A stretch of DNA of 64,000 nucleotides from assembly GCA_965649825.1 (NCBI GenBank), contig OZ287702.1, positions 186,001-250,000 on the forward strand, read 5' to 3'. The notes under the pieces were generated by a model, which was not told the origin of the DNA, made no database searches, and saw only the letters and a list, made by a program, of their open reading frames with translations. The translations under genes were made by a program, and so were the position numbers. Shown in pieces: positions 2,893-37,579 of this stretch (its first letter is position 1; every line of letters begins with the position of its first letter). This stretch comes from Penicillus capitatus. Its lineage: Eukaryota; Plantae; Chlorophyta.

Positions 2893-4605
2893 CTAGCAGT
2901 GTCTCTTGCTCATGGCCTCAAGCGTGAAATGCAGAAATCGTTGATCAAAGTCCTTCGCATGCACGTCGCGCTCCTCTCCTTCCCAGCCATAGATTTCCAA
3001 GTACTTTTCTCGCAGATCTTCCAGCACTGTGTTGGATCCGACGCCCGTTACAGCTGTGCCTGAGAGGACACCATGGAAGTCTCCCTTTGTCGCACTGCTG
3101 TCGAAAAGCGTCTCGGCATCTGTGACATCTGGCGGCGCAAACTCTGTCACGAAAGCTTCGAAATGGTCACGGAAATCGCAAGGCGTCTCAGTGCTCAGCA
3201 GCTCGTCCAGTCTTTCGGCAATGCGTTCCAGACAACTGTCGCGGAGATTCTGGACATCGTAGTCATCCGCGAGCACCAAAAGTTGACAAGTCTGATAGAA
3301 AGTGCTCTCTATTCTCTTGATCTGTTCACCGAGGAGACGTTTCGCTCGGAAAATCAGAAAGCGATCGGACAATTCGAAAAGCTCGGACAGCAATTCTGTG
3401 TCCAGCAGCTGCGTTTCGGAGAGGGAGCTCATGCCGTCTGTGTAGAGATACTCCAAAATACATCGCATGGACTGGACATGGACATCTCTCATGTGCAGTA
3501 AAGCGAGAGACTGTCCGAAGATGGGACACTTCGTTTGGGGCAGCGCTTCGAATCCATGCTCCGAACTGAACGTCAGCTGACGAAAGAAGTCAGAACGCGA
3601 GCACAGAATGCACAGATGTACGCGAAAGTGCGATTGCTCCACTCTGAGGACGGCATCCGCATAGTCGTTTCTCACACAAATCTCACTCAACAAGACCTCA
3701 TCTGTCCCCATCCATTCATCCAATGTGCGCGAACGTTGATAGACGGTTTGCAAATCGTGTTCCAACGATGCCTCATCCGGAAAAGAGTAGGGATAGAGGA
3801 TAAACCTTTTGGGCGCCGTATCCCGTTTTATCGACTTGAAATAATACTTAATGCTGTGCAGTTCCTTCTCTGTCATCTTCACCAGTGCTGGATTGCCATA
3901 ATGTTTTGCCAGTTTTCGCAATTGATCAACATCTGGCGTATCCAGTTCGATCTTTTCGGAGTAGACATAAATCAGCAAGGCCTCGACAACATGACGCAGA
4001 ACACTGCCTTCTGAGAACGAAATGCGATGGATGTCGTCCGAAATCGGCAGAGACGAGAGAATCTCATCGAAACGCGTCAGACGAGCAGCCAAGATTACTT
4101 TGTTCAGGCGGTAAACGACTTCGCCTAGTGTCAATTCCAGATCACACAGATCATCAAAACTCACATGCGCCTCTGCTGGCTGTTCTGGATCATCACACAG
4201 CGTACAGAGTTTCTTAATCGCCGTTCCGAGCGGCTTCAATGGTGGTGCCTTTTTGACATCTGCCTGGAGCAGCAAATCGCGAATCTCAATTGTCAGGGCA
4301 CCATAGAGACAACGGTCCCCATCGAATGTGTTTTCACTGCAGATGGCTCCCTGAGACAGGAGATACTTCACCACGTCGACATGTCCACAGAGACAGGCGT
4401 AGTAGAGCGGAACCGAATCCCAGAAATCGCGTCGGTTGATATCAACGCCGTCGCGTTCGACGAGCTTACGGACACGTGCAATGTCGCCCGTGCGAGATGC
4501 CAAATAAATATCCGCCTTCTCACAGAGTCGCGGCCGCGGAATCGCATCGCGGTCTTCGTCTGTCAGCGCTTCAAAATGTTGCAAGAAGGACAGCGATGAC
4601 AACAT
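2893..4605 (-). CDS. Ankyrin-repeat and BTB/POZ domain protein (ABTB1-like), apparently intronless
   Basis: Ankyrin repeats (ASRTGDIARVRKLV...DFWDSVPLYYACLCGHVDVVKYLL), then two BTB-like domains (LNKVILAARL; FRVHLCILCSRSDFF...ILEYLYTD). First in-frame ATG at 4605; the ORF track starts at TTG 4635. Confidence 0.8.
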   Translation of the reverse strand: MLSSLSFLQHFEALTDEDRDAIPRPRLCEKADIYLASRTGDIARVRKLVERDGVDINRRDFWDSVPLYYACLCGHVDVVKYLLSQGAICSENTFDGDRCLYGALTIEIRDLLLQADVKKAPPLKPLGTAIKKLCTLCDDPEQPAEAHVSFDDLCDLELTLGEVVYRLNKVILAARLTRFDEILSSLPISDDIHRISFSEGSVLRHVVEALLIYVYSEKIELDTPDVDQLRKLAKHYGNPALVKMTEKELHSIKYYFKSIKRDTAPKRFILYPYSFPDEASLEHDLQTVYQRSRTLDEWMGTDEVLLSEICVRNDYADAVLRVEQSHFRVHLCILCSRSDFFRQLTFSSEHGFEALPQTKCPIFGQSLALLHMRDVHVQSMRCILEYLYTDGMSSLSETQLLDTELLSELFELSDRFLIFRAKRLLGEQIKRIESTFYQTCQLLVLADDYDVQNLRDSCLERIAERLDELLSTETPCDFRDHFEAFVTEFAPPDVTDAETLFDSSATKGDFHGVLSGTAVTGVGSNTVLEDLREKYLEIYGWEGEERDVHAKDFDQRFLHFTLEAMSKRHC

Positions 4606-4638
4606 ACTGTTCAGCCGTTCCGAACGTACCAACACATT

Positions 4639-21761: not shown

Positions 21762-24700
21762 ATGTCTACGTTCAATGCGGTTGGCCATGAAGGTGGCGGC
21801 GTCTTTGTAAGACGGGCCCCTAAGCGTCGACGGCCTTATCGATCCCTCGGTCGCCGCCGTCGCAGTACCAATGTTACCCCCTTTATGCAGTTGGGTCGCA
21901 CCGAAGTCGTGGCGTCACACGATCTCAACAAAGAGACCTTTCTCGAGCAGGCTCTTGTGCACTGGAGGGACAACTGCGTCGCTGAGCACTTCCAGAGTGC
22001 TTATGATGAACTAACACCTCTCTCCGGTTCCCTCGCAAAAATCATCCATTCTCGCAAGAAGATCATCCGAATCATCTACATCAGACTCATACCAGAGGCA
22101 GCGCTCTCACTGCGGGCCTTGATGGAAGTCCTTGCCGGTTTCGTTCGTGACATCCAAGGCATCAACACATTTACAAGTGTCCCCGCGATTCGATGATGGT
22201 GGGTACTGTAGATATGTTCCTTGAGTTTGTCCCTGAGCTGGTCGAGGTTGTCGTTTCGTTGAGTACGAAGTTGGCATGGGAACCAGAAACGTTGGGGTAT
22301 GTATTCGTTGCGATGACAAAAGTGGTGAGACATTTGCGGAGAGCCATTCATCCAACGCTCAAAGATTTTTTGACCAAAACCATCCGGCCATTGATTCTGC
22401 ATCCAGATCCATTTGTGCGACGACTGTCGTGTCAAAGCTTGGCCGTCATCTTGGAACAGGTGAAAGTCCAGACACGTCGAATGGGGATCAGGTGTTTATT
22501 GGGATTGATATGCGTCAATCGTGGGAAACAGGAATTCATGCATGGATACGCGGGGCTCGTTGGGCAAATGCTCATGGGCGTCATGGGTACATTTCGATCC
22601 AAAGCTCCAGAAATCTTGCAGATCCTGGTGGAGAGCAATCTCATTCAAACAGCACATTTTCGCCAACACCGAACTTCCACTCGTAAAGAGACTGTACCCA
22701 AATGGCTCACGGAGGAATTTCTGCAGCACGCAACTTTAGAGTATATCAAGAGTGTCATCGGACGGTATGTGGTGAAACGAATGGATCCGTCCGCAGCCAT
22801 TGAACTGTGGAAAATACTCCTTCGTCTGACGCAGATCAAAATGAACGATGCCCGAGACAGCATAACGGAAGATGAAGAAGTGGACGCCACAGGCCTCTTG
22901 ATCGGCATCACCCGTCTCATATCCATTGCCTCTTTTGTGCTGGCACGAAAGAAGGGTGCTCTGCTCAAGAATCTAAATCCAATTTGCTGTTTCTTGAGAC
23001 TGGTTCTGTCAGAAACGGTTCAGGGAGAGCTGGACGCAATGGGCATTCCCTTGTGGGTGAGTGGAATGTTTGCAAGGGAGACGGTGACGTTCGTTTTGCA
23101 TGGACTGAACTTAGAAGGGCGTTTTCGGAGAGATCCACTCTGGAGTGACTGTCAGGCGCAGCTGAAGACGCTCACTGAAAATGTCAACCGACTGAGTCTG
23201 TCAGATCTGTTCGACATAAGCAAAGAAGCCAACAGAGATCTCACGTCACTGAAGAGTCTTGTCTATCCACTGCTGCGTCGTTTAGCAAAGATCGTCATGA
23301 ATGGCACAGCCTCAGTAGAACATCAAGAGATGGCATGGGTTCAGCTCGATATTTTTCTGGAGTCCATTTCGGCAGTAGATGTCGCATCAGAAGGGAAGGG
23401 ACTTTTTGGAGAGGTCTCTTTTCCGCTATGGCTTTGCGAAACAATGAAAGCATGGCCTTTGGATGAATGCACCCGACGTTTCTCCTCAAGGAATGTCCGC
23501 GCCGCATTCACGATGGGAACATACTATTTGAAGGGTTTATCCAAAATCTACATTCATGAACCTACTGTCATTGTGGAGAGCACAAGACCAATGCTGTCTT
23601 CTCTGGCATCGTTGGATACCGGTGATCCCTCCACGTTGTTGACAGATGAGGACGTTGCCTCTCTTCGTTGCCGTATCGTTCTGCAGTTGGCCGAAAACGA
23701 GGCTAAGATCAACAGAGAGGAAGAATCGGGAGATCCCGTGCCATGCTTAGTGAATTACTTGACGGAGGCGATGTCTCGACTGAAGGCCTCTCCCTCTGAA
23801 AGGGCGAATCTACGCTGCGTTTCAGAACTGTCGAAATTGATCCAGGGAATGACGATGCCGGTTTTGGATACTGTCGGTACAGATTCGGAAATGGAGATGG
23901 AGGAAGACAGCTTTGATTTTTCGGGCCTCATCAGAAAGGAAGACTTGGATTACTGGATGGCAGACCTGGGGCCATCTCTCTGCGATCCGGACAGCACTGT
24001 TCGATGTTACGCGCTAGAATTTTTGTCAATTGCAAACCGAAGTGTGCTAAAGAGTTCTTCTTCATCAAACAAGTGATGACAGCTTTTTTTGGGGGGGGGG
24101 GCTACAGGAAATACCTCATGTTCTTAGGTACTGCCTGTTCACAACGTTGCTCGAGATCGAGAGAGGAGATTTTGATGGATTGGATCGAAAAGCTGTACGG
24201 CTTGTGGAAGACATTCGAACGCAGATCGAACACGGTCTTCTTAGTGCGTCATTTCATTCTTCTTGTTTCCATAGTTTCTTGGGATTGCTGCATCTGCGCT
24301 ACAAGCCAATCTGGCCACTGGCAGTTCACACCTTGTCTTTCCTGACGAACATGCATTTTCAGAGCTACTGGAATCGGATCTTTGAACGCGTCAAAGCATT
24401 GCACTTCATAATCCTGAGCAACGCCAGATGTATAACCAAGACTCCTACCAATGGCACAACGGTTAATTCCGAGACCGTTAACGATGCAGAAGTTTCAGAA
24501 AGAGAAAGAGTAAAGAAGGTAGATGATGCGACAGATGAATTCACAGAACTCTCTTATCTCCTGCAAGCGATAAAGGGTAACTCTGTTCCCTCTTTCCTCG
24601 TACATGATCCCTGGTGCCATAGGAGTGGATCGATGTTATCTGGAGACAAAGATTCACGAATGGTTGCCTCTGGTGCAGAAATGGATTCGGCAAAGGCTGA

Positions 24701-27700
24701 TGAGAGCGTTCCCATCTCAGGGAGAGGACCCCGAAGATAGACAGCTGTCCCATCATCTGTGGATCAAGGGGACTCAGCTTTTCCTGGAGACTCTCTTGGG
24801 TATCGATTCTCTTTCCTCGATTGACGAAAGGGAGACACTCATCAAAGACGTTGGATCTCTCCTAACAGAAACTGACCTGCAAAAGCTGGTGCTGTCCGTG
24901 CTTTCCAAGCTGCACTTAGAATTTCTGGATCCGTATCTTCAATCTCTCATTAAAATGACAGAGAAAGCGGGAGTCAAACATGCTCTCATCCATTTCCAGC
25001 TAACCGTCGATGGTGGAAGCATTGCAGCCGTTGACAGAGAACAGCTCATTCCTGTCATCACCCGCCTGCTCTTTCCAAGTATCGCGACGAAAAAGAAAAG
25101 ACGCGGAGATGCTGTTCTCTCTTATCTCTCCAGTGCCGAACCAGATGACCTGCTCACCCTCATCGAACTCTGTTTCCGCCCTTGGGAGAATCTTCTCCAG
25201 CAACAGGCCCAAGACCGAGAACGTCTGTCGAGATCTCTAAAATTTGACATGTTTGATCATCCCTGGTGGTCCTCTTTTCTGCAGAATAGCTCCTTGGAGT
25301 TTTGGGTGCAGAGAGTTAAACTCGATCTCGCAACGGCAGTGGATCGTACGAAGCTTTTGCATTTGGGTATGGTCTTCAAAGTGAAGCGCATGTATTGACA
25401 GGCATTGCTGTCTGTCTAGTTGACATTCTGGTGTTCAACGTGGGACACAAGCTCCAACCATATCTCACCTTCCTGTTGATGTGGCCGATTTCGATTATCA
25501 GGTTTTACCTGGATAACGAGGAGGAAGAGGATTCTTGTGACCTGCAGCTTCGCTGTGTCGCCCTTCTGTCCAGTTTCCTCGAACAGTTCTCCGAATCGTG
25601 TGCATCGCATGTATTCTTGTTGGAGATCCTGACCAGCATCTCACACCAGCTCATTGCTAGATTCATGGACACAAGCACAACAGCAGGGTAAGATCGCATC
25701 AGAAACAGATCACCGTCTGATGATGTGATAAAGGATGTTTGCCACGGCAGAGCTTCTGCATTCCGTACTTGCCATTCCGCATTTCGCACGAGAAATGAGT
25801 TCTTCTACAGAGGCAGATACAGGCACAGATACACTGACACAGTTGTTGTCTCCAGTCTTTGCGCTGTTGTCGAATTCTGAATCATCTCGAGAGCGACAAC
25901 GTCTGGTCCTGGATATTGTGGATCTCTGCGTCGGGTACGAAGAACAGCAGATTCTTCAGCTCAGCGTCCCATTTCTGCACGGATTGCTCGTTAACATGAA
26001 AGACTACATCGATGCGACGACAACTAAGCATCGTCCGAATGCAGAGGATGTGCATCGAGCGCTCGGAATCTTGGAGCGACTGCTGCAGCTGGATCATTGC
26101 CAAGAGATACTGCATCCACTATCCCTTGCCCTTTTTGCCTTTCTCAAGACATCTCGATCAGATCCATCTGTTCTGCCGATTCTGAACTGCCTGACGAGTC
26201 TTTTCCTAAAGGCATCGCAGACAATAGATGCTCTCTTTTCTGCCGACGAGCTCTGGAGCTTTGTTTCGGTTTTGGCCGCCAAAGTGCTAAAGATTCAAGC
26301 AAGAGAATGCAGATCAAAGCTATCGGATGTTTTCATCGCCTTGTCTGCGCATCTGCCTTCCTTTGTGTTCTCTGCCGAGATCTTTGCATCTCTGTGCAGC
26401 TTCGTTCCCTATCAAGTCGATGAGATTGATTACGACCGGAGACTGGATGCATTCAGAACACTGACAGAATCTTTCTGGAGTCTGGAAAAGCAGGAAGAAG
26501 CAGATCTTCTGTTGAATGCCTGTCTGTTCGAAATGCAGAATGAGAAAGACTTCACATTGAGGCAGGCTGCATCTGCTGCACTGCAAAAGTACTCTATTCT
26601 GTTTGACAGAGCACAGCATCTGATGTCCTTTTCTGTAGAGTGGTGACCTCCTGTGATCCAGAAGCAATTGGCATGCTGGATGCTCTGTCTCTGAAAAGAT
26701 GGCTCTTCGACAAACTCATTCAGTCTATTGCCAAATCTTGTCTGGCTGTTCGCCAGGAACAGTTGGTCGTTGTCTGGACCATTATCGACGAGGACAAAGA
26801 CAGTGCTTACAGATGGAAGAAGTATCTGTTTAGCAAAGACACGGAGCAAGATTTCTTTCATAATGTTGCCAATATCAAGGTCTCCCGTCGCATCAAGGCC
26901 TGGAAACGGGTCACGAACCACCTGGAGAGCCATTTGTCATGTATACGTGATAGGAGGGATCGAACAGTGCCGCCAGAGCTTATTGAAATGGCAAAACTGT
27001 TAACGTCCTTACTGCTGCAGACCATCTTCGAAGGAGACAGAAATGAAAAGACCAAGACCAGACTGCACCATTTCGTAAGTCCGAGTCCCCGAATCTTCAT
27101 TCTGAATGTTTATATAGGCGACTCGAGCACGAGAGGCATGTTTGGTTGACATCGGTGCCCAGACTCTATCAAATGTGGCATGTCTGTTGCCATGGCCCCC
27201 GTACCGTAAGCTCTTGAATCAGATGTTGGCATTGGTCAGGAAAGAAGAACATCCCACGAAAGGAATGGTCCGAGCGCTCTGTGTTGTTGTGGACGCCTGT
27301 TACTCGAATGCACGAACAAACCAAACAGCAGGTGGCAGAAATGACTCTTCTGTTGCACCCGCTGACAGTGAGACCATAGACGAAGACAACAGCAAGACAA
27401 GTTAGAATCCATGACGAAAGTTGCTCGTTAGAAGGACTGGTTGTCTTTTGCAGATGACGAGGAAAGAATGTCCGAGTATCTGTTTGCAAACGTGTTGCCG
27501 GTGCTTGACAGTCTCTTGCTCAATCGAGCAGAAGATAGAGCATGTCTGCCAGTGGCTGTATCGCAAGCCAGGATTCTAGCATCCAGGTCAGAGACAGACT
27601 GTTCGGATCTTCGAGGTTCGTCTTGGAAAACAGTTTGCCAGTCGTTCATTTCGGTTATTGGTGTGGCAGGTTTCCTGTTGAAACTGGCACATCTGTTGCT

Positions 27701-30700
27701 GTGCCGAGAGCAGTCTATGAGAGACGATGCGCGGAAAGTCTTTGTAGCCGTATCCGTTGCCGTGGGGTCTCGATTTTTGCACCAGTGCATTCAAGCGCTC
27801 ATCAGTGCGCTTCCAATGAAAGGATACATGGCACATGTCCTCGATCACACCCTATTCTCAGTGAGATTCCCCAACGACATGAAGCGCTAGGCAGACAAGG
27901 GTTTATCATTAGGTTCTGGAAACGGTTGGCGAGCAGCCTTATGCCACAGATGTGGATATGGTTATGCACTTGGTGCTTCCGTTGATTGACCATTCCTTGT
28001 TTGGTGAATCTGCCGAAGCACGGGGTGCCAAAGAGTTTGCATCCAAGTATCGTGAAGCCAAAAGCACACGGTCGAAAGAAACCTTCTATCTACTTTGCAA
28101 ACACTGCACGTTCAAAACACAAAGCCTCGCCATCAAGCAATTCCTCGAAGGTGGCAATCGTGCTTGCGGTTTCACATCTGAATCCAGATGTGTAATGGAG
28201 TAGAGGAGATCATGAAGTGTCATCTCCTGTGGCGACGTCTGATTGTTGAGTCCCTGTTGGACTGCGCCGCACGAGGGTTCTTTGCGAATCCCACTGCTGG
28301 TCTTCCAGAAAAACTGGAGTTTGTTCGTAAGATTGCTCTCCAGGAGGTCACCGAAGAGAATGAGATCACCAAGTTGTTGGGGCCAGAGAACACTGACACG
28401 ATCGACCAATTGGAGCACAGCGTAGACCGACGGCGAAAGGATGTTCTTGCCAGGTATCCTTCAGTCAAGGCACCGAGCATACATGGATGGCAAACATAGG
28501 TATCGGCATTTGCTCTTGGAAATGACTGTCAATTTCTTGCGCATGTCGCTGAAGCATGCCTCAGTGTGCAGCGATACAACTCTAAGAGAGATCGATGCCT
28601 TTGTGCCTCTGCTCATCTCATGTCTGCACGGTCGTCGCGGAAAAGTGGCGAGCCTCTCGTTGAAGGCACTAACACACATGATTGCATTGCCACTCCCTTC
28701 GCTTAAAGACAACGCCGCTGAAGCGGGCAGTGCTGTTATTCGGCTGCTGGATGCTGTTCCGAACATGAACGATCCAGTTGCTCAAGACTGTCTGCGACTG
28801 TTGGCCAGAATCCTCCACGCAAAAGACTGGTTTCAACCGACATCCCTCCAAGTCAAATCTCATTCTTTCAATGCTTGGCAGCTTTCTGAGTGCTTACAGG
28901 TCAATTCTTTGCTGACATTGATTTCGGTGGATCTAGATGTTCGAACTGACCCACATGCGTCTTTTAGACTCCTTCGTTCCATCCTCGATCAAAAGATCGT
29001 TGTCCCCAAAGTCTATGATCTCATGAAACAGGTAAGAACGATCCACCATGGCAAGACGAGCAGTGTGTGGATTGGGGTGTTTGCAGATTCGGGAGATGAT
29101 GATTCAATATCTATCTGGTCCGATTCGGCAAATGGCGTCCAGTCTGTTTCTGCAGTTTCTCATGAACTATCCCCTTTCGGATCAGCAAGTGGAGCAGCAC
29201 ATCGTATTCACACTCGCAAACCTGGCATACGAATACGAAACAGGTTATCCGGCTCAACAGACCAATGATCTGAGTGCCTGTCACAGGTCGCGCTGAGGCA
29301 CTGGAAATGATTCGTCAACTTGTACAGAAGTTTCCAATCGAACTCGTGAAAGACAAACACGTGTTGATCTACGTGCCTCTTCTTCAGAGACTGCATCAAG
29401 AAACTGTCCCATCATTGAAGAAACAAACAGCCGAGGCAAAAACTACGTATCTTCTCGTCGCTGCGACGACCCAGATTCTTTTCGCAGGTTTTGTCGACCT
29501 TGTTTGCAAAACTACCAGAAAAGAGTATTGAAGAACTCATCAAGATGAATCTAACGTGGATAGAGACGCCATCCGATAGCCTACGCCTAATGGGCTTTCA
29601 GGCAATGTTTGTGTTAATGGAGAAGCATGCGCATCTCTGCAAGCATCACGAAGAAGTCCTGCTGCATCTTTGTCAGAAATGCCTGTCAACAAGAACATCT
29701 CTCGTCGCTTCGTACGACGCAGGCGAATCTCTTGAATGGAAGGGACTTTACTGTGCACTTCATTTGATGGAGTTGCTCTGTGAAGGGCCAACTCAACTCC
29801 TGCAGCCTCCCTTCGATGCTGAACCATGGGGCGGTATTGTGGAACTGTTGAGATTTCCGCACACCTGGATCCGTACCGTGTCCCTTCGTCTAATAGGCTA
29901 TGCGTTCAATGTCTTAGAGAGAAAGATCGATTCCCTGATGACGAAAGACTCCGTTGGACTCGTTGGGAATATGACAGCTTCACAGTTGGCATTCGCTTCC
30001 TACATGGTGTTGGAATCGAATGTCGTCGACGAAGGTGCTGCACTACAGAGCAGCAAGAACCTTGTATGGCTCGCTCCCATTCTCAATGTTCAGTCCGGCT
30101 GCCTACCGAGGAAGAATGAGATCGTCGTCGAAGACGAAGGCTTTCACTGTGAAGAGGCCGAAGGGCCACCTGGTTTATCCCTTATGGGTCTCATACGCCG
30201 CATGAATCGATATGCCAATGAACGATCCAAAACATCTGTTGGACTCCGGACAGCGTCTTTGAAGTTTCTGGCGGCTCTTGCCGTTCGGTTAAACAGTTAT
30301 CAGTGTTTGGAGCCATATCTCCCGCTTATGCTGGATCCTATTTACCGATTGGTGGAATGTAAGGAACTGCGCTCGACGGAGGAAGGTGCCAGGAATCTGG
30401 CAGAAGAAGTTATGGAGTACATAAGGGGAATCCTGGAGAAGGATATTTTTCTAAACGCTTATGCCACAGCCAAGAAGAACGTTGAGGAATCAAGAAAAAA
30501 ACGCAAGACTAAGGAGGCTATTCAGGTCATCTCTCTTTGCATTCTTCTGCGGTTCACTAGATCGTTTGTAGAGAGTTAAAAATCCAGAAGGAGCTGCGAA
30601 ACGCCGTTTGGAACAAAATCGCAAAAAATCGGCGTCCAAAAGACACAAGGCCTCTGTCGAGGAAGAAAAGATGGAGGCATCATCCACAGGGATCATGAAG

Positions 30701-30844: not shown

Positions 30845-30921
30845 CTAGAATGCACATTTTTCCAAGAGGGTGATCGTCTCGACATGAGAGGTTTGGGGGA
30901 AGAGATCAACAGGGATGGCGG
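30845..30921 (-). pseudogene. rlmD: Displaced 3' end of the RlmD gene (AIPVDLFPQTSHVETITLLEKCAF*)
   Basis: Removing the element and one GCGG copy joins ...YCLKT to AIPVDLFPQTSHVE in frame, restoring the TrmA/RlmD D[M/L]FPxTxHVE motif; stop TAG at 30845-30847. Confidence 0.95.
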
Positions 30922-30994
30922 TGTGACGAGTCCTGAACGGCCAGACAAAATATTACAGGGATCGTGCATCATTCGGTCCATTAATCGCCCCACA
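30922..30994 (-). repeat. 3' LTR (73 bp)
   Basis: TGTGGGGCGATTAAT...GGACTCGTCACA on the minus strand, identical to the 5' copy; contains TGTAA. Confidence 0.98.
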
Positions 30995-31094
30995 AAGCTT
31001 CCACTGCGCTTCATTCCATCACGCCCAAAGCAAATATTAATAATGAAAATAATAAAGAATAAGTAATTCGGAAACTAACAAACTAAATGAAATA

Positions 31095-33935
31095 TTAGGC
31101 TGGTCGCAGGTGCGCCTTTCTCAACAAATTCCGATGCACGCGGATCGCCTTACTAGATTCTAACGATCGGGCTTCCCAGAAGTTATGGGCGATCTTTTGG
31201 GTGAGAATAAATGGCCCAGACCAGCGCGGCCTTAACTTCCCACTCCATTGTTTGTCCAGGCTAGCGTTGTAGACCCAAACTGTATCTCCATCCCGGAGTT
31301 CGTCTTCTGGGCTGTTGTCCTTGTAAGTCTTCCTTTCTTGATAACTGATGTTCTGATCCACTCCGCGGTGGCGCAAAGCCAGTACTGCAGCGACTCTCGT
31401 ACCGTCATCTCCGGCATACTGATGATCTACTGCCGCGGACGGTTCACTTGGATAAAACGACTCGAATCGGGGCTCGTAACCAAACATCATCTGAAACGAC
31501 GACAGTCCACTGATCTTGTTTTTACTCGAACGAAGCATCTGCTCGATTGATGGTAGGTAATGTGCCCACTTTTCTTCATGGTTCACCATTCTTCGAAGTC
31601 TCCGCAGCACCCCCTGATTCAATCTCTCACAACTCCCGTTGCATTGAGGAGTATACGCCGGTATCGATCTTCTACGGATGCCATGTTCTGCCAACCATGC
31701 TGTTACTTTCTTGGAGGCAAAAGCCGTAGCGTTGTCAGCGACGAACATAGAAGGGTTTCCGAAAAGGTGCGTCCACCTTTCTAGCATCTTCACGACTGCC
31801 TCGGATGATGCCTCGATCGTCGCTGACAACATGGGGAACCTCGTGCAAAGGTCGACGCATGCAAGTATGTATTTCTTTCGATTGTGGCTCTGGAGAGGCC
31901 CAATGAAATCCATTGCTATCGCTTCGTTTGCCTCGATCCACGACATGTTGCGGAAAGCTCGTGGCGTGTCCCTTCTCGCTTGCCTTTGACAGTTGATGCA
32001 TGTTCTCACATGCTGCTTCACATCTCGGTGGATCTCAGGCCAGTAAGCAAAGCGTCTTAGTCTTCTTTCGGTTTCAGCTTCACCATAATGACCTTGTCTG
32101 TCATGGGCATCGGTCAGCGCCTCTGTTTTGTCTTCATCGCGCTCCCAGCATCGCACCCATTGACACCCGTTGAAGTATTCGAGCTTCGAATTGCACATGC
32201 GAAAGTTCTTTGCTCGCTCCCGGATCCTTTTTTTCTTGATCTCGTTCCAGTTCTTCGGGTACGTATTGTTCAAGAGGAATTCGGGCAGGCTCTCGTACCA
32301 GCCATCCGGCGCAACGTCTTCTTGGACTTCCTCACCTTCCGCTGCGTGCTCGTTTTGCTTGGCCTGGTGACAGGTCTGCCTTCCTTGTTCGTTCTTCATT
32401 GGCTTGGGGTTCGTTAAGTTTGTTTGCCAAAACCTGGATCGAGACAGAATGTCCGCAATTGTGTTTTTTATACCGTCGATGTGATGTACACTGCCGGCTG
32501 ACAGGTTCAGCGAGTCCAAGAATCGCTGCACGACTAGGCTTTGGTTCTTGGGATTGGTTCCGTTCAATACCACCGTGGAGTCAGTGAATATCCGAAACTG
32601 CCGCCCGATGATGAAAGGTCTGCAGCTATGTAGCGATCTCTTCAATGCAAGCGCTTCTGCGTGTCCCGACGATTTAAATTTGGTCGCATCCAAATGACCG
32701 CAGCCCATGTGGACTAAGCGCTGTTTGTCTGCGTCAAACAGTGCGAACCCGTATCCATGTCCGCATGCATCGACGTACATATCGAGACGTTCGCTCGGGA
32801 TTCCTTGATTGAGATACCAGCACTTGTCGAATTGTCTGGTTATCTCTGCCCATTTGTCTTCATGTTCCTTCCAAAAACGGACGATCTGGTCACCCTTCCA
32901 TTTCAGCATCTTTTGCAGGAGCGCTAGGCTTGCAGTGTCGATCCGACAATGATTGAGCATGCACCTCATCAAGCCCAGCGCGGACCTGAGTTCTCGCACG
33001 TTTGTAGGCGGCGGCATTTGCTGGGCTCTGCTTCTGATGTCGTCTGATATGTTAACCCCGTCTTGCGACAGGGTTCGTCCGAGAAATTCGGTCTCACGTG
33101 CTGCCCACACGACCTTGCTGGGCTTTATCGTCCATCCATGTGATTTGAAAACTTCTAGACTTGTCATCACAGCGCGCACGTGGTCATCCATTCTGTCACT
33201 CGCTATGGCCAGATCATCGACGTAGCTTGCGATCTGAGCATTTATATCCCGCCTTCGAAATTCCGCACGGATGTCGGCCACCGTTTCGTTCACAGCCATC
33301 ATGAACCATGCACTGCTATTCTTCCATCCCATGGGCAGACGCGCAAATGCCCACAGCTCGCCTTTCCAAGAAAATACGAAATACGCTCTCGTGTCGAGGT
33401 CCAGCCCGATCTGAAAGTAACCTGAGGTCAGGTCAACCTTCGTGTAATACCTCTTTCCTGCCACGATCTCGATGGCTCCATCTCGGTCGAGAGGTACTGC
33501 TGGTGTTGCAGTCGTGAGGCAGTTGACGGCCCTGAAATCCATTACGATGCGACGGGCCAATTGCCCCTTTTTGTTCACCGAAAACCAGGGGATCAAATGT
33601 CTTATCTTGCCCCTGAAAGGCACCACGATGTCTTGACGAACGAGTTCCTCCAATTCTTCACACACGGAGTCAGTTTCGGCCTTTCGGATGTGCATGGCCC
33701 TCGTCGACACGTATCTGACTGCTCCACAAACATCGGCACGAGACAAACGCCACTTCTTAAACAATCCAATCTCGGCGGAGAGGACGTCAGGAAACCGCGT
33801 CTCGCACTCTGTTTGTAGGTCTGCAGCAGTCGTTGTCTTCTTAATCAAAGGAGCGTCATATGACTGCGTTATCACGCCCCCTGCTGAAAAAGTCTCGGCT
33901 TCCTCTGATGAGCGAGTGCACGGAAACTGCCATTG
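31095..33935 (-). CDS. Retrotransposon pol: RT - RNase H - integrase
   Basis: RT (RIVMDFRAVN, KVDLTSGYFQI, LPMGWKNS, YVDD), RNase H (YVDACGHGYG, EALA, IFTDS, NTIADILSR), integrase HHCC (AHDRQGH...CINC), DDE (AMDF, ADNA, NGSCER) and GPF motif. Frame is open from 33935 (after a TAG) with no nearby ATG. Confidence 0.97.
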   Translation of the reverse strand, partial: QWQFPCTRSSEEAETFSAGGVITQSYDAPLIKKTTTAADLQTECETRFPDVLSAEIGLFKKWRLSRADVCGAVRYVSTRAMHIRKAETDSVCEELEELVRQDIVVPFRGKIRHLIPWFSVNKKGQLARRIVMDFRAVNCLTTATPAVPLDRDGAIEIVAGKRYYTKVDLTSGYFQIGLDLDTRAYFVFSWKGELWAFARLPMGWKNSSAWFMMAVNETVADIRAEFRRRDINAQIASYVDDLAIASDRMDDHVRAVMTSLEVFKSHGWTIKPSKVVWAARETEFLGRTLSQDGVNISDDIRSRAQQMPPPTNVRELRSALGLMRCMLNHCRIDTASLALLQKMLKWKGDQIVRFWKEHEDKWAEITRQFDKCWYLNQGIPSERLDMYVDACGHGYGFALFDADKQRLVHMGCGHLDATKFKSSGHAEALALKRSLHSCRPFIIGRQFRIFTDSTVVLNGTNPKNQSLVVQRFLDSLNLSAGSVHHIDGIKNTIADILSRSRFWQTNLTNPKPMKNEQGRQTCHQAKQNEHAAEGEEVQEDVAPDGWYESLPEFLLNNTYPKNWNEIKKKRIRERAKNFRMCNSKLEYFNGCQWVRCWERDEDKTEALTDAHDRQGHYGEAETERRLRRFAYWPEIHRDVKQHVRTCINCQRQARRDTPRAFRNMSWIEANEAIAMDFIGPLQSHNRKKYILACVDLCTRFPMLSATIEASSEAVVKMLERWTHLFGNPSMFVADNATAFASKKVTAWLAEHGIRRRSIPAYTPQCNGSCERLNQGVLRRLRRMVNHEEKWAHYLPSIEQMLRSSKNKISGLSSFQMMFGYEPRFESFYPSEPSAAVDHQYAGDDGTRVAAVLALRHRGVDQNISYQERKTYKDNSPEDELRDGDTVWVYNASLDKQWSGKLRPRWSGPFILTQKIAHNFWEARSLESSKAIRVHRNLLRKAHLRPA

Positions 33936-34447
33936 CTAAGCTCGATGTGATGTCTCTCGTTCTCGTCCTCTAGCCCCACGTCAAACAACACCGTCCTGGG
34001 GGTTATTTTCAACGGCTCTGCCTTGTGATTCGTCACTAGGATTGAGCAGAAATCCTTGTATGTTCCGCCCAGTTGCGTGGAGAAGTGAGGATTGACCACG
34101 CCGTTTCTGCGCCATTTGTGCGGCGCATATAGTCCAACTGGCACCTTGATGAGTCGACGCTCCTGGGGTCCAAGGTACACGGATCGATTGGCAGAGAAGA
34201 CGACTCGATCGCCAGTGCGCACTGGCAGGACGTCGACCTCTTCGGTCATTCTCCCAATCGTCAATGCAGGTCGCTGTGCAGCAACAACCGGCTCTTGAGT
34301 GACCTTCTGGCACTGGAAGGTCCTTCCATTCATTACCACGGCCCTCTTCTTGGGATGCACTGTGGCGTCGTTGGCTTGAAGGAAATCCATGCCTAATAGG
34401 ATGTCGTAGCCCGGGTTGGCATCACCAGGCATTCCACAGAAAGAGTC
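33872..34447 (-). CDS. Retrotransposon ORF2: protease C-terminus plus degenerate dUTPase-like segment
   Basis: YDILLGMDFL (retropepsin C-terminal motif), then VYLGPQERRLIKV...GVVNP...ILVTNHKAEPLKITPRTVL, which follows trimeric dUTPase strand spacing without the catalytic motifs. Confidence 0.75.
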   Translation of the reverse strand, partial: DSFCGMPGDANPGYDILLGMDFLQANDATVHPKKRAVVMNGRTFQCQKVTQEPVVAAQRPALTIGRMTEEVDVLPVRTGDRVVFSANRSVYLGPQERRLIKVPVGLYAPHKWRRNGVVNPHFSTQLGGTYKDFCSILVTNHKAEPLKITPRTVLFDVGLEDENERHHIELSNGSFRALAHQRKPRLFQQGA

Positions 34448-35583
34448 CTATTCCACTGATTTCCCTTCAGCTTAGCCTTGATCGTCGCCTTTCTGCGGAT
34501 TTCGACCTGTGATCCATCCGCTATAGAAAGCCTGTTGTTGCAAGGCTCAGTTGGCAGTTCAAGCTTCTTGACGATCTCTTGACTGACGATCGACTTTTCG
34601 GCTCCTGTGTCGACAAGTCCCGTGGCAGCTAGGGTGACTATTCCTTCGTTGGGAAGGAGCACCATCGGGAGCTTCATGACACGTCCGGCCGCCTGCCTGC
34701 TTGTGCTTCCGCCATCTTTCCCTTGCGAGCAGTGAACTCGCGCAACACCGCACACGCCGTATTCCTCGTTCTCGGATCCGGATGGTTCATCATCGTCATC
34801 GATTCCTTCGATCATCTCAGGGATGTCCAAATCCGTAGCTTCCCGATCCAAGGTTGCTCTGTGAGCTTTGGGGCGTTGAGTTCGTCTCGCACTCGTCCCG
34901 CGATCCAAATACTCCAGGAAGCGTCTCATGCCAGCAGCTTCTCTGTGGCTGCTTTTCATTGCTTCTCTGGCCGCAACCATGAGTCTTCCAATGTTCGTTA
35001 TATTCTCGAAAAAGATCTTCCCATCGACCACTACCTTTCCGCTTGTAGGCTGTGCATTGCCCCCGCGTCTTACGAAGTTGACCGTCTGTTCCGTTTCTTC
35101 GTACGCCCGGGCGACGTCAATGTCCATAGCGTCAGGACTTTCCAAAGAGGACAGTTCTCGCACGAAATCCTCGAAGGAAGTTCCGGGCATTGTGCGTTTC
35201 AATCCCTTTGCTGTTACGCACCAATGTCGGACGAGACTCTCCAAGAAGATCTCAATCTTCTGTTCCTCGTTCAACCATGCCGACTGGAGTAGATCGGCAG
35301 CTGCCATGAATCGCACGATGTAGTCATTCAGATTCTCCCCATTTCTCTGTCGAATCTTTAACAGCTTTTGCCAGGCACCGGCCTGTGTCGGCTTCAGACG
35401 ATCGAGGAGGCGTTCTAGTATCTCCTTTGCTGTCAGGCTGGCTGGTAATGCCGCAGCATGCTTCAGGACTGCTCCTTCAAGTGACTGCATTAAGATCAGC
35501 CTCTCTTCTGGGGGCGAAAGCCCTGTCACTGAGCAATAGTCCTTAAAAAGTTTTCCGAACACGTTTATGTCCTCGAACGACAT
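34393..35583 (-). CDS. Retrotransposon gag (capsid) plus protease N-terminal part
   Basis: IRQRNGENLNDYIVRF (gag major-homology-like), DAMDID, and LVDTGAEKSIVS (aspartic protease active site). No CCHC knuckle seen. Confidence 0.92.
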   Translation of the reverse strand: MSFEDINVFGKLFKDYCSVTGLSPPEERLILMQSLEGAVLKHAAALPASLTAKEILERLLDRLKPTQAGAWQKLLKIRQRNGENLNDYIVRFMAAADLLQSAWLNEEQKIEIFLESLVRHWCVTAKGLKRTMPGTSFEDFVRELSSLESPDAMDIDVARAYEETEQTVNFVRRGGNAQPTSGKVVVDGKIFFENITNIGRLMVAAREAMKSSHREAAGMRRFLEYLDRGTSARRTQRPKAHRATLDREATDLDIPEMIEGIDDDDEPSGSENEEYGVCGVARVHCSQGKDGGSTSRQAAGRVMKLPMVLLPNEGIVTLAATGLVDTGAEKSIVSQEIVKKLELPTEPCNNRLSIADGSQVEIRRKATIKAKLKGNQWNRTLSVECLVMPTRATTSY

Positions 35584-35595
35584 TTTGCTTAGTTT

Positions 35596-36096
35596 CTAAG
35601 TCCAGTGTAGTTTTGGACCCACGGTACCGCTGCCAGTCGAGTGGCTCGACCTCGAATGCGTCGATGTCGTCGCTGTGCGAGCGATTGGCGTGCTACTGGG
35701 CGTTGACGATGCCATCGCCACGACGCGTTTCTTGAGGTTCTCCACCTCCGTCTCAACGGCGCCTACCCTTTGTCCGTCGCGTTTGGCACCTTCATCCATG
35801 CACTCGAGCGTAGATCTCATATGGGACACGTCGCCGCCGATGGTCATCATTTCCTGCTGACGCTCGACGCTGCCCTTTTTGAGTTCTTCTAGCTCTTCCC
35901 TTAGCCTTTTCAGCTCCGAGCTCTGTTCATCGGCTCCTCTCATGTGCGTTTCCACGGCTTTTTCGATTTCTTTCTGCCGACTGCGTAGCTTGCTACGGTT
36001 GTCTTCGACTTGCCTCTCAAGCGCCGGTAGCTTTTCGTTGTTCCACAGCTCTACCGTCTTTATCCATTCTTCAATAACTCGGATCCGTTGTTCCAT
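35596..36096 (-). CDS. Retrotransposon ORF0: coiled coil plus Ser/Thr-rich tail, in frame with gag
   Basis: MEQRIRVIEEWIK...LKRLREELEELKK...SSTPSSTPIARTATTSTHSRSSHS; ends at TAG 35596-35598, 12 nt before the gag ATG in the same frame. Confidence 0.8.
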   Translation of the reverse strand: MEQRIRVIEEWIKTVELWNNEKLPALERQVEDNRSKLRSRQKEIEKAVETHMRGADEQSSELKRLREELEELKKGSVERQQEMMTIGGDVSHMRSTLECMDEGAKRDGQRVGAVETEVENLKKRVVAMASSTPSSTPIARTATTSTHSRSSHSTGSGTVGPKLHWT

Positions 36097-36100
36097 GAAT

Positions 36101-36113
36101 CGCTCCGAAACCA
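36101..36113 (-). promoter_or_regulatory. Primer-binding-site-like sequence TGGTTTCGGAGCG
   Basis: Begins with TGG 3 nt after the 5' LTR; 10/12 match to the plant tRNA-iMet PBS TGGTATCAGAGC. Confidence 0.75.
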
Positions 36114-36116
36114 ATT

Positions 36117-36189
36117 TGTGACGAGTCCTGAACGGCCAGACAAAATATTACAGGGATCGTGCATCATTCGGTCCATTAATCGCCCCACA
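36117..36189 (-). repeat. 5' LTR (73 bp)
   Basis: Identical to 30922-30994. Confidence 0.98.
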
Positions 36190-37579
36190 GCGGTTTTCAA
36201 GCAATAGGTACCGGAATGGCACAGAATATTCAGATCCCGTGCCAATGTACTGGGTTTGCAACTCACGTAAACGATGAGCCGCGGTCGAATTCTCAGAATA
36301 ACGTCCAAAACCTCTCTGTCACATCCTTTTCGTGGAGGATCCAACAATATCACATCGGGGATGCATGGCAATCGTTGAACCACATGTTCAAATCTTCCAA
36401 CCTGGTGATCACACGATGCCTACTCGTAGATAGTTAATTGTTTTCCTCTTGACCTGAAAACGGACGTTATGAATCTGGTTGTGCTCAGCATTGATCTGTA
36501 CACAATCAATGGATGCTGAATGGCTGTCAATGGCCCAGCACTGAAAGAGAGGATGTGCCTTAGCGATAGGCAGTATCATGGTTCCAATACCGGCATATCC
36601 ATCGACAATCGTTTCGTTTTCATTCAGTTCCAGGAGCGAAAGCAGTCGCAGGACCATGCGTTCTGCCTGTTGTGTGTTAACTTGGAAGAAAGCTGTGGAG
36701 CGGATTCGCAATTCCAGTCCACAAAAAATTTCCTTGATATAATCTCGTCCATGAAGGCAGATGGTCGCTGGTCCGAAGATGCGATTCGAGTGATCGGAAT
36801 GATGGTTCAGACAAATGCCGACCACTGAAGGAAAATTCTCCATCCACTTGGCACTCCGTTCACACAAACCTGACAGATGCGATTTGGTCGACACCAAGGT
36901 GATCAATACTTCGCCTGTTCGCTGCCCCACGCGCAGCACAAGGCTCTTCAAATCGCCCTTCTTCGTCACCTCATCGTAAATCTCCCAGGGATCCAATTCC
37001 GCCTTAAGTCTGGCAAGAACGAAGTCGAATGCGTTATCTTGTACCGGACACTGATTGACGTTCACAATACGATGTGTGCCTTTCCGATAGTATCCAGCTA
37101 TGACGTTTCCCGTACTGGATCTCCCCAAAGGGTAAATCACTTTATTCCGGTAGCCAAACGGACTGGATTCCATGATCTCCTTCAGCTCAATCTCTTGAAA
37201 TTTGCCAATTCTCTTGAGCGATTCTTCCACCTTTGTGCATTTTTTAATGATGTAGAGATCACCTCTCTGAAGATTGGTGCTTTACTTGTCTGCTCTTGAA
37301 AGTGAGCTGAGCAGAGTAGGCGACGTTTTGCCATTGGCATCCACCACACTTTCCTGCCAAGATACAAGGCGCGCGGACACGATGGTTTGATGCGTCCAGA
37401 ATATCGATCAGCTGTCCTTCGGCATAGGCTGGTCGGACTTTGACAAGTCGCGCGAGGAGCGTATCGCCGGGAACGCCGCCGGGAACGAAAACAACGCGAT
37501 TCTCAAACCGTCCAACTGCATATCCATTGCTCGCTAAATCTGTTATATCGAGAGCAACGACACTTCCTTGTCGCCACAT
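36190..37579 (-). pseudogene. rlmD: Bacterial-type 23S rRNA m5U methyltransferase RlmD/RumA (TrmA family), 2 introns, interrupted by the retrotransposon
   Basis: TRAM domain (ITDLASNGYAVGRFENRVVFVPGGVPGD), Fe-S motif PCILAGKCGGCQW, YRNKVIYP, AFFQVN, DGYAGIGT, LDPPRKG and YVSC; introns of 55 and 52 nt; the C-terminal motif lies beyond the element. Confidence 0.93.

What the first reader, a model, noticed from the sequence alone, without database searches (positions are those of the whole stretch)
30922..36189. Full-length Ty3/gypsy element with ultra-short (73 bp) identical LTRs and a 4-bp TSD
Seen: two identical 73-bp direct repeats with TGTG...CACA ends, a GCGG duplication on both sides, a PBS-like site and a complete RT-RH-IN frame. 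Established: LTRs of coding-competent Ty3/gypsy elements are normally hundreds of bp (Ty3 sigma is about 340 bp), and most plant gypsy elements make 5-bp TSDs. Inference: 73 bp must hold U3, R and U5, leaving almost no room for a promoter, so this may be an undescribed minimal-LTR lineage that LTR finders with a 100-bp minimum would miss. Identity over only 73 bp is a weak age bound.
Basis: partly seen in the sequence, partly recalled or inferred. Interest (0 to 1): 0.8.

Follow-up and report, generated by a model that had tools for sequence, protein, structure and literature searches.

The report
Gypsy-type retrotransposon with 73-bp LTRs
This is a genuine Ty3/gypsy-type jumping gene from an unidentified eukaryote whose terminal repeats are naturally only 67-83 bp long in three related families, which is near the smallest known for a protein-coding element and below the 100-bp cut-off of common LTR-finding settings.

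Summary
Two identical 73-bp repeats (30922-30994 and 36117-36189, TGTG...CACA) are flanked by a GCGG duplication and enclose a 5,268-bp element. It lies on the minus strand and encodes gag, protease, RT, RNase H and integrase.

The short LTRs are a lineage trait, not deletion remnants:
- Three other complete copies of this family have LTRs of 71-73 bp.
- A sister family (76% pol identity) has 67-bp LTRs, and a cousin (49%) has 83 bp.
- More distant relatives (38%) have 181 bp and probably at least 104 bp.

All share an invariant primer-binding site (TGGTTTCGGAGC), a conserved polypurine tract, and a -1 frameshift signal with a covarying hairpin and a likely pseudoknot. Target duplications are 4 bp and were perfect in 6 of 7 insertions, mostly at NCGN.

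The window copy is not coding-competent. Its gag-protease frame carries a private TAG codon and a private 1-nt deletion; only pol (926 aa) is intact.

Outside this small clade, no protein exceeds about 28% identity. The host, the primer tRNA and the U3/R/U5 borders remain unknown.

Verdict: a new variant of a known kind, of moderate interest.

The parts
30918..30921 (.). Target-site duplication, left copy (GCGG on +; CCGC in element orientation)
   Evidence: Read directly. It matches 36190-36193.
30922..30994 (-). 3' LTR, 73 bp (TGTGGGG...GTCACA in element orientation)
   Evidence: Identical to 36117-36189. The same 73 bp bound the copy in L006, and 71-73-bp versions bound L019 and L020.
30995..31017 (-). 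Polypurine-tract-like plus-strand primer site, GGAATGAAGCGCAGTGGAAGCTT, abutting the 3' LTR
   Evidence: The core GCAGTGGAAGCTT|TGT is identical in L001, L003, L006 and L007. L008 and L009 have GC[GA]CAGGGAAGCGAT|TGT.
31095..33875 (-). pol frame, 926 aa, intact: RT (YVDD), RNase H, integrase (HHCC, DDE core, GPF module)
   Evidence: ORF list, Pfam, motifs. The best solved-structure match is Ty3 Gag-Pol 7q5b, E 1.3e-44, collinear.
33826..33891 (-). Inferred -1 ribosomal frameshift signal. U-run with in-frame CUU UUU C (33891-33887); hairpin arms at 33880-33874 and 33856-33850; loop GCAGUC at 33867-33862; downstream GACUGC at 33831-33826. The gag-protease stop TGA is at 33874-33872.
   Evidence: pol lies in the -1 frame in all five families. 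The stem sequence differs between families but still pairs. The two hexamers are invariant and keep the same spacing, and in L008 the downstream hexamer is read in a different codon phase.
33872..34432 (-). Distal part of the gag-protease frame, put out of frame in this copy
   Evidence: In L001, L006, L019 and L003 this stretch is continuous with the protease frame.
34416..34418 (-). Private 1-nt deletion (GCCAACCC here, GCCAAACCC in siblings) that breaks gag-protease
   Evidence: Pairwise alignment with L001. L006 also has AAA. An assembly error in a homopolymer is not excluded.
34396..35595 (-). gag core (weak Retrotrans_gag match) and aspartic protease (LVDTGA)
   Evidence: Pfam and motif scan. 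No CCHC zinc knuckle was found.
35596..35598 (-). Private in-frame TAG; siblings have CAG (Gln)
   Evidence: Stop-codon statistics for the window give no sign of a variant genetic code.
35599..36096 (-). N-terminal coiled-coil part of gag. The start ATG (36096-36094) lies only 20 nt inside the 5' LTR.
   Evidence: ORF list; only weak coiled-coil-type Pfam matches. L019 has the same ATG spacing and an uninterrupted 741-aa gag-protease frame.
36101..36113 (-). Primer-binding site TGGTTTCGGAGCG, 3 nt (AAT) downstream of the 5' LTR
   Evidence: Single match in the window. The 9-mer TGGTTTCGG matched in L003, L006 (twice, once in the nested mini-element), L007, L008 and L009, and TGGTTTCGGAG in L019 and L020. 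The flanking reads show all 12 bases TGGTTTCGGAGC in each.
36117..36189 (-). 5' LTR, 73 bp. Candidate signals: ATTAAT at LTR positions 10-15 (36180-36175) and TGTAATA at 38-44 (36152-36146).
   Evidence: Repeat. These are the only internal blocks shared with the 67-bp LTR of the sister family. Their function is inferred, not shown.
36190..36193 (.). Target-site duplication, right copy (GCGG)
   Evidence: Read directly.

Best explanation
The feature is a 5,268-bp Ty3/gypsy-type (Metaviridae-like) LTR retrotransposon on the minus strand. It sits between a UTP20 gene and a tRNA-methyltransferase-like gene of an unidentified eukaryote. It belongs to a small, isolated clade whose LTRs are naturally tiny: 67, 73 and 83 bp in three families. 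More distant members have 181 bp and probably at least 104 bp.

Shown:
- LTRs with TG...CA ends, and a 4-bp target duplication.
- A conserved PBS and a conserved polypurine tract.
- Gene order gag-PR then RT-RH-IN.
- pol in the -1 frame, behind a conserved U-run and hairpin.
- A very compact layout, with about 95% of the element coding and the gag ATG 20 nt after the LTR.

Inferred mechanism:
1. Transcription starts inside the 5' LTR, perhaps about 30 nt after the ATTAAT block, and ends in the 3' LTR. This would leave an R region of about 10-30 nt.
2. An RNA ending in ...GCUCCGAAACCA, most likely a tRNA, primes minus-strand synthesis at the PBS.
3. RT-RH-IN is made by -1 frameshifting at UUU, stimulated by a hairpin-type pseudoknot.
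4. The integrase makes 4-bp staggered cuts, preferring NCGN.

This particular copy has a nonsense codon and a frameshift in gag-protease. It could move only with Gag and protease supplied by sibling copies.
For: - Repeats and TSD.
- Domains and strand. Best solved relative is Ty3 Gag-Pol, collinear over RT-RH-IN.
- LTR length is constant within the family: L006 has 73/73 bp identical to the window's, L019 71/73 bp, L020 73/73 bp. L001 has a 3' LTR 98.6% identical.
- Relatives: 67 bp in L007 and L002; 83 bp in L003, whose LTR end coincides with the end of the contig; 181 bp in L008.
- 4-bp TSDs: window CCGC, L007 CCGG, L019 ACGG, L020 CCGG, L008 GTAC and the nested mini-element ACGG are perfect. 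L006 has CCGA/CCGC, one mismatch.
- PBS and PPT conservation.
- Frameshift signal.
- Private lesions.
- Isolation of the clade: the best proteins outside the window's own family are 75%, 49%, 38% and 38% identical over pol length (plus two partial ones at 39-45%), then there is a drop to 28% or less among 1.84 billion representatives.
Against: - No RNA data exist, so the transcription start, the poly(A) site and the U3/R/U5 borders are guesses.
- The primer RNA was not identified. No tRNA gene was found in the window or the seven host-lineage loci scanned.
- There is no clean empty site. The alternative contig L011 lacks the element but carries 473 nt of unrelated sequence at that position.
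- Every copy of the 73-bp family that I examined has at least one damaged or interrupted reading frame, so current activity of this family is not shown.
- The U-run is not a canonical X XXY YYZ heptamer in most families.
- The second stem of the pseudoknot is invariant, so it shows no covariation.
Confidence: 0.9

Rival explanations
1. The 73-bp repeats are what remains of ordinary LTRs several hundred bp long after internal deletions, or this is one degenerate copy of a long-LTR family.
For: Only a prior expectation: coding LTR elements usually have LTRs longer than 100 bp. This copy does carry lesions.
Against: Four complete copies at different loci in two samples have the same 71-73-bp LTRs, directly abutted by the PBS and the PPT. 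Sister and cousin families have 67 and 83 bp with the same junctions. Identical deletions in both LTRs of every copy are not credible.
Confidence: 0.02
2. It is an ordinary member of a gypsy clade already described with very short LTRs (for example the Mag lineage of animals), so nothing about it is new.
For: - From memory only, the Bombyx element mag was reported with LTRs of about 77 bp.
- Mag-lineage elements of mosquitoes have short LTRs of 119-304 bp (PMC3286476).
- The nearest named proteins are arthropod gypsy polyproteins.
Against: - Those named proteins are only 25-28% identical, no closer than different gypsy clades are to one another.
- Mosquito Mag-lineage elements mostly make 5-bp TSDs and use tRNA-Ser, Leu or Arg primer sites. 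This clade makes 4-bp TSDs and has a different, invariant PBS.
- No reference phylogeny could be run.
Confidence: 0.2
3. The element replicates by self-priming, as Tf1/sushi-type elements do, or by some other non-tRNA route, and that is what lets the LTR be so short.
For: No tRNA matching the PBS was found. The implied acceptor stem would begin with UU, which is unusual.
Against: - The short-LTR elements have no complement of 6 nt or more between the PBS/leader and the LTR. From memory, Tf1-type priming needs about 11 nt.
- The PBS is invariant while the LTRs diverge almost completely, which points to a conserved external primer.
- The PBS begins with TGG, as expected for pairing with a CCA 3' end.
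Confidence: 0.05
4. The repeat pair is an assembly artefact or a chance duplication around an unrelated RT gene.
For: The window comes from a metagenome assembly.
Against: The same architecture was assembled independently on at least six contigs in two ENA assemblies and one Logan run. An exact 73-nt repeat with PBS, PPT and TSD in the expected places is not a chance event.
Confidence: 0.01

Closest known systems
Ty3 of Saccharomyces cerevisiae (type member of Ty3/gypsy, Metaviridae)
   Same: Gene order PR-RT-RH-IN. It is the best solved-structure match, collinear over RT-RH-IN (7q5b, E 1.3e-44). It has LTRs with TG...CA ends, a PBS and a PPT, and makes pol by frameshifting.
   Different: From memory, Ty3 has LTRs of about 340 bp, a 5-bp TSD, +1 frameshifting, an initiator-tRNA primer and a CCHC knuckle in gag. 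This element has 73-bp LTRs, a 4-bp TSD, pol in the -1 frame behind a hairpin or pseudoknot, a different PBS and no CCHC motif.
Mag lineage of animal gypsy elements (mag of Bombyx mori; mosquito Mag-like families)
   Same: A gypsy lineage known for short LTRs: 119-304 bp in Culex (PMC3286476) and about 77 bp for mag itself (memory only, not verified here). Elements are compact, about 4.5-5.5 kb. The nearest named proteins to this clade are arthropod.
   Different: Identity to any named protein is 28% or less. Culex Mag-like elements mostly give 5-bp TSDs and use tRNA-Ser, Leu or Arg primer sites. Clade membership was not testable.
SMART / FRetro129 and TRIM elements (miniature LTR retrotransposons of plants)
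   Same: LTRs of about 85 bp with TGT...ACA ends (PMC3281118). This shows that LTRs of this size can support retrotransposition and solo-LTR formation.
   Different: Those elements are non-coding (292 bp in total) and have 5-bp TSDs. Their putative autonomous copia partners have LTRs of 105-117 bp. The window element encodes the full protein set. A TRIM-like 768-bp element with 127-bp LTRs, the same PBS and the same 4-bp TSD is nested in the sibling copy L006.
Retroviral and plant-virus -1 frameshift sites with an H-type pseudoknot
   Same: A U-run ending in UUU, a 5-7-nt spacer, a stable hairpin, and a loop hexamer complementary to a downstream hexamer.
   Different: The heptamer is non-canonical (N NNU UUU) in most families. 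Frameshifting and the second stem are inferred only.

Membership tests
Ty3/gypsy LTR retrotransposons (Metaviridae) | Direct long terminal repeats ending in TG...CA | tested here: met
   73-bp identical repeats, TGTG...CACA. Relatives have the same kind of ends.
Ty3/gypsy LTR retrotransposons (Metaviridae) | Short target-site duplication (4-6 bp) made by a DDE integrase | tested here: met
   The 4-bp TSD is perfect in 6 of 7 complete insertions of the clade.
Ty3/gypsy LTR retrotransposons (Metaviridae) | Domain order protease - RT - RNase H - integrase (integrase after RT, unlike Ty1/copia) | tested here: met
   Pfam order Asp_protease, then RVT_1, RT_RNaseH, Integrase_H2C2, rve. Collinear with Ty3 Gag-Pol.
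Ty3/gypsy LTR retrotransposons (Metaviridae) | PBS complementary to a host tRNA next to the 5' LTR, and a PPT next to the 3' LTR | tested here: inconclusive
   Both motifs sit in the right places and are conserved across the families. No matching tRNA could be found.
Ty3/gypsy LTR retrotransposons (Metaviridae) | RT/IN phylogenetic placement within the superfamily and in a named clade | not testable with these tools
   No GyDB, REXdb or Repbase reference set was available. The only indirect evidence is that Ty3 is the best PDB match and that named hits reach 28% identity or less.
Chromoviruses (gypsy elements with an integrase chromodomain) | Chromodomain at the integrase C-terminus | tested here: not met
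   No chromo-domain Pfam match at E <= 0.01. The C-terminus has only a GPF module.
Errantiviruses / env-bearing gypsy elements | A third, env-like reading frame after pol | tested here: not met
   Only 100 nt, including the 23-nt polypurine tract, lie between the pol stop (31095-31097) and the 3' LTR.
Tf1/sushi-type self-priming elements | The 5' end of the transcript is complementary to the PBS (about 11 nt) | tested here: not met
   The 67-, 73- and 83-bp elements have no complement of 6 nt or more between the leader/PBS and the LTR.
TRIM / SMART miniature elements | Non-autonomous: no coding capacity between short LTRs | tested here: not met
   The window element encodes gag, PR, RT, RH and IN. 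The feature is met only by the nested 768-bp element in L006.
Mag lineage | RT-based clustering with mag, SURL or Cer1 | not testable with these tools
   No reference sequences were available, and I did not type any from memory.

The most novel reading that the evidence does not exclude
This is a previously undescribed, deep-branching Ty3/gypsy clade confined to a poorly sampled eukaryote lineage. It has shrunk its LTRs stepwise (181, then 83, 73 and 67 bp) to the smallest size known for protein-coding LTR retrotransposons while keeping a fixed primer site, a fixed polypurine tract and a fixed frameshift pseudoknot. If so, about 70 bp is enough to hold both integrase ends, a promoter, R and a poly(A) signal. 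The clade also supports its own miniature parasite, which uses the same primer and the same integrase target.
Probability: 0.45. Interest if true: 0.55.

Novelty: new variant of a known kind. Interest (0 to 1): 0.4.

Why it matters
It marks the lower size limit of a working LTR. Three related families of protein-coding elements have LTRs of 67-83 bp. That space must hold two integrase recognition ends, a promoter, an R region long enough for strand transfer, and a 3'-end signal. This makes the minimal LTR directly testable.

It also exposes a blind spot. A published pipeline setting of a 100-bp LTR minimum would miss the whole clade, so such elements may be under-counted in protist and invertebrate genomes.

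The conserved frameshift pseudoknot and the invariant primer site are ready-made markers for finding more members.

Tried and rejected
- Variant genetic code (TAG = Gln) to explain the in-frame TAG: rejected. Reading frames do not lengthen under TGA-only stops, and siblings have CAG.
- Clean empty-site test with the low-coverage alternative contig L011: the element is absent there, but the intergenic filler differs (473 nt against 180 nt, no homology), so the site cannot be joined cleanly.
- Host identification with a UTP20 exon and a P5-ATPase exon: only unnamed ENA and Logan proteins were found. There were no Rfam or tRNA hits in the window.
- Search for relatives in JGI metagenomes with a pol profile and with the PPT-LTR junction: nothing real was found. 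The 7 DNA hits were chance matches without RT.
- Names for the nearest outgroup proteins: only pseudoscorpion and scale-insect 'hypothetical' or 'K02A2.6-like' entries at 25-27% identity.
- Literature check of the remembered 77-bp LTR of mag: not retrievable in the library held.
- MAFFT alignment of the frameshift region put the stems out of register. I therefore read the stems from single-sequence folds and by eye and did not run a formal pair count.
- Self-priming: rejected.
- Solo LTRs of this family elsewhere in the window: none.


Full report
**Observation**

The window holds two exact 73-nt direct repeats at 30922-30994 and 36117-36189. On the + strand each begins TGTG and ends CACA. GCGG lies immediately outside both (30918-30921 and 36190-36193), and a fifth base does not match. 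I did not print the element as a whole; I read only its ends and short internal stretches.

**Anatomy**

All long reading frames between the repeats are on the minus strand, so 36117-36189 is the 5' LTR. In element orientation the layout is:

| Feature | Window coordinates | Note |
|---|---|---|
| 5' LTR | 36189-36117 | 73 bp |
| Spacer | 36116-36114 | AAT |
| PBS | 36113-36101 | TGGTTTCGGAGCG; unique in the window |
| gag ATG | 36096-36094 | only 20 nt after the LTR |
| gag, N-terminal part | to 35599 | coiled-coil type |
| gag core and protease | 35595-34396 | weak Retrotrans_gag match; protease LVDTGA |
| Rest of the gag-protease frame | 34432-33872 | out of frame in this copy |
| pol | 33875-31095 | 926 aa |
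| Untranslated tail | 31094-30995 | 100 nt, ending in GGAATGAAGCGCAGTGGAAGCTT |
| 3' LTR | 30994-30922 | 73 bp |

- The pol frame has RVT_1 (YVDD), RNase H, the integrase zinc-binding domain (HHCC), the rve core and a GPF module.
- There is no CCHC knuckle, no chromodomain and no room for an env frame.
- About 95% of the 5,268 bp is coding.
- The best solved-structure relative is the Ty3 Gag-Pol polyprotein, collinear across RT-RH-IN (7q5b, E 1.3e-44).

**State of this copy**

Two lesions are private to the window copy.
- Codon 35598-35596 is TAG, where the sibling copies L001 and L006 have CAG.
- Near 34417 the window has GCCAACCC, where L001 and L006 have GCCAAACCC. This splits the gag-protease frame.
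- In L019 the same frame runs uninterrupted for 741 aa.
- A variant genetic code does not explain the TAG.
- The 1-nt deletion sits in a short homopolymer, so an assembly error cannot be excluded.

As assembled, this copy has an intact pol but a broken gag-protease. It would depend on proteins made by other copies.

**Where the window comes from**

An exact-protein look-up places the window on ENA ERZ25074695 contig ctg340592_344x_l (6.9 Mb), from a metagenome assembly. The flanking genes are eukaryotic. UTP20 exons lie on the + strand up to 30579, and a TRM5/TYW2-like methyltransferase lies on the minus strand from 36409. UTP20 and P5-ATPase exons find only unnamed proteins. The host is therefore an unidentified eukaryote, and nothing suggests a plant.

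**Are the 73 bp remnants of longer LTRs? No.**

| Locus | Relation to the window copy | LTRs | TSD |
|---|---|---|---|
| L006 | same family, same sample, another contig; ~99% nt identity | 73/73 bp, identical to the window's | CCGA/CCGC |
| L019 | same family, sample ERZ26696514 | 71/73 bp | ACGG |
| L020 | same family, sample ERZ26696514 | 73/73 bp | CCGG |
| L001 | same family, 5'-truncated | 3' LTR only, 98.6% identical | - |
| L007 | sister family, 76% pol identity | 67/67 bp, identical | CCGG |
| L002 | sister family, 5'-truncated | the same 67-bp 3' LTR | - |
| L003 | cousin, 49% identity; circularly collapsed Logan contig | 83 bp | - |
| L008 | distant relative, 38% identity | 181/181 bp, identical | GTAC |
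| L009 | distant relative, 38% identity | probably at least 104 bp | - |

- In L003 the contig ends exactly at the ...CCACA end of the LTR, which is preceded by the same PPT and followed by the same PBS.
- Short LTRs are thus a trait of the lineage, most extreme in the subclade that includes the window.
- LTR sequences differ almost completely between families. The shared parts are the termini and two blocks common to the 73- and 67-bp LTRs: ATTAA[T/A]GGA at positions 10-18 and TGTAATA at 38-44.

**Conserved cis elements**

- The PBS TGGTTTCGGAGC is invariant in all five families, in hosts of very different base composition. It is also present in a nested 768-bp non-coding element in L006 with 127-bp LTRs and TSD ACGG.
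- The PPT core GCAGTGGAAGCTT|TGT is identical in the three short-LTR families.
- No tRNA gene was found in the window or the seven host-lineage loci scanned, so the primer is unidentified.
- The implied 3' end ...GCUCCGAAACCA has the A73-CCA and U1:A72 pattern that I associate, from memory, with tRNA-Glu-like species. This is a lead only.
- Self-priming is not supported.

**Expression of pol**

In all five families pol is in the -1 frame relative to gag-protease. The junction contains:
1. An in-frame NNU UUU followed by C or A.
2. A 5-7-nt spacer.
3. A hairpin whose arms differ in sequence between families but still pair: GGGGCGT/ACGCTCC, GGGGCGT/ACGCCCC, CGGGCA/TGCCTG, GACAGTAG/CTACTGTC and GACAATAAAC/GTTTATTGTC.
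4. An invariant GCAGUC in the loop.
5. An invariant GACUGC at a constant distance downstream.

In L008 the downstream hexamer is read in a different codon phase, so its conservation acts on the RNA, not the protein. I infer -1 ribosomal frameshifting stimulated by an H-type pseudoknot. The first stem is supported by compensatory changes. The second stem is supported only by conservation. Frameshifting itself is untested.

**Integration**

Six of seven complete insertions in the clade have perfect 4-bp duplications: CCGC, CCGG, CCGG, ACGG, ACGG and GTAC. The seventh differs at one base. Most targets fit NCGN. The flanks beside the 3' LTRs of the truncated copies L001 (ACGG) and L002 (CCGT) fit the same pattern. 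The 4-bp TSD is therefore real, and the integrase appears to have a weak target preference.

**How a 73-bp LTR could work (inference)**

The two termini serve as integrase recognition ends. The ATTAAT block could act as a TATA-like element. L003 and L008 have clear TATAAA boxes in their LTRs. A start about 30 nt downstream would fall near position 40-50 and leave about 25-30 nt for R plus U5. R regions of about 10 bp are documented (PMC3601003). TGTAATA could be an initiator or part of a 3'-end signal. None of this is shown.

**How isolated the clade is**

In a search of 1.84 billion representative proteins, the best matches outside the window's own family were 75%, 49%, 38% and 38% identical over the length of pol, with two partial ones at 39-45%. 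After those, identity falls to 28% or less. The few named proteins at that level are arthropod gypsy polyproteins. JGI metagenome scans found nothing.

**Comparison with what is known**

- The element meets every structural criterion of Ty3/gypsy that I could test.
- It fails the criteria for chromoviruses, env-bearing elements, self-priming elements and TRIMs.
- Placement in a named clade needs reference sets I did not have.
- Short LTRs have precedents. FRetro129/SMART has 85-bp LTRs but is non-coding, and its putative autonomous partners have 105-117 bp (PMC3281118). Mosquito Mag-lineage elements have 119-304 bp (PMC3286476). From memory only, mag of Bombyx has about 77 bp.
- The REXdb survey used LTR-FINDER with -l 100 (PMC6317226).

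**Verdict**

This is a real, structurally complete but gag-protease-defective copy of a Ty3/gypsy-type element. It belongs to a small, isolated clade with naturally tiny LTRs. I rate it a new variant of a known kind, of moderate interest. Its main value is as a natural minimal LTR and as a warning about annotation thresholds.

Noticed in passing
L006:1522-2289: A 768-bp non-coding, TRIM-like LTR element is nested in gag of a sibling copy. It has 127-bp LTRs (TGT...ACA) and TSD ACGG. Its PBS TGGTTTCGGAGCG sits flush with the LTR. It therefore uses the same primer site and the same 4-bp target type as the 73-bp-LTR family, and is probably mobilised by it.
   Followed up: partly
L001:3589-3932: A 339-bp solo LTR (TGTT...CACA) of an unrelated family, with a 5-bp TSD (GCTGG), interrupts pol of a sibling copy. 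The host lineage therefore also carries conventional LTR elements.
   Followed up: partly
L011:11123-11595 versus window 30912-30921 and 36190-36359: A low-coverage (16x) alternative contig of the same locus, 97-98% identical in the flanks, lacks the element. It has 473 nt of unrelated sequence where the window has 180 nt, so the two haplotypes or strains differ by more than the insertion.
   Followed up: partly
L007:9340-9859: A called gene with a weak Cas12f1-like_TNB Pfam match, possibly a Fanzor/TnpB-like nuclease, lies about 2.8 kb downstream of the 67-bp-LTR element.
   Followed up: no
L002:94-287 and L002:166-2193: There is an exact 97-bp tandem duplication. A LINE-like reverse transcriptase (RVT_1 plus zf-RVT) on the opposite strand abuts the 5'-truncated 67-bp-LTR copy.
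   Followed up: no
window 22193-30579: A multi-exon UTP20 gene (UTP20_N and UTP20_C matches) ends about 340 bp from the element. On the other side, a TRM5/TYW2-like methyltransferase ORF begins about 220 bp from it. The insertion is therefore in a short intergenic spacer of a gene-dense region.
   Followed up: partly
window 2893-4635 (minus strand): A 580-aa frame combines ankyrin repeats with two BTB/POZ stretches. Ankyrin-repeat genes also flank the sibling copy in L001.
   Followed up: no
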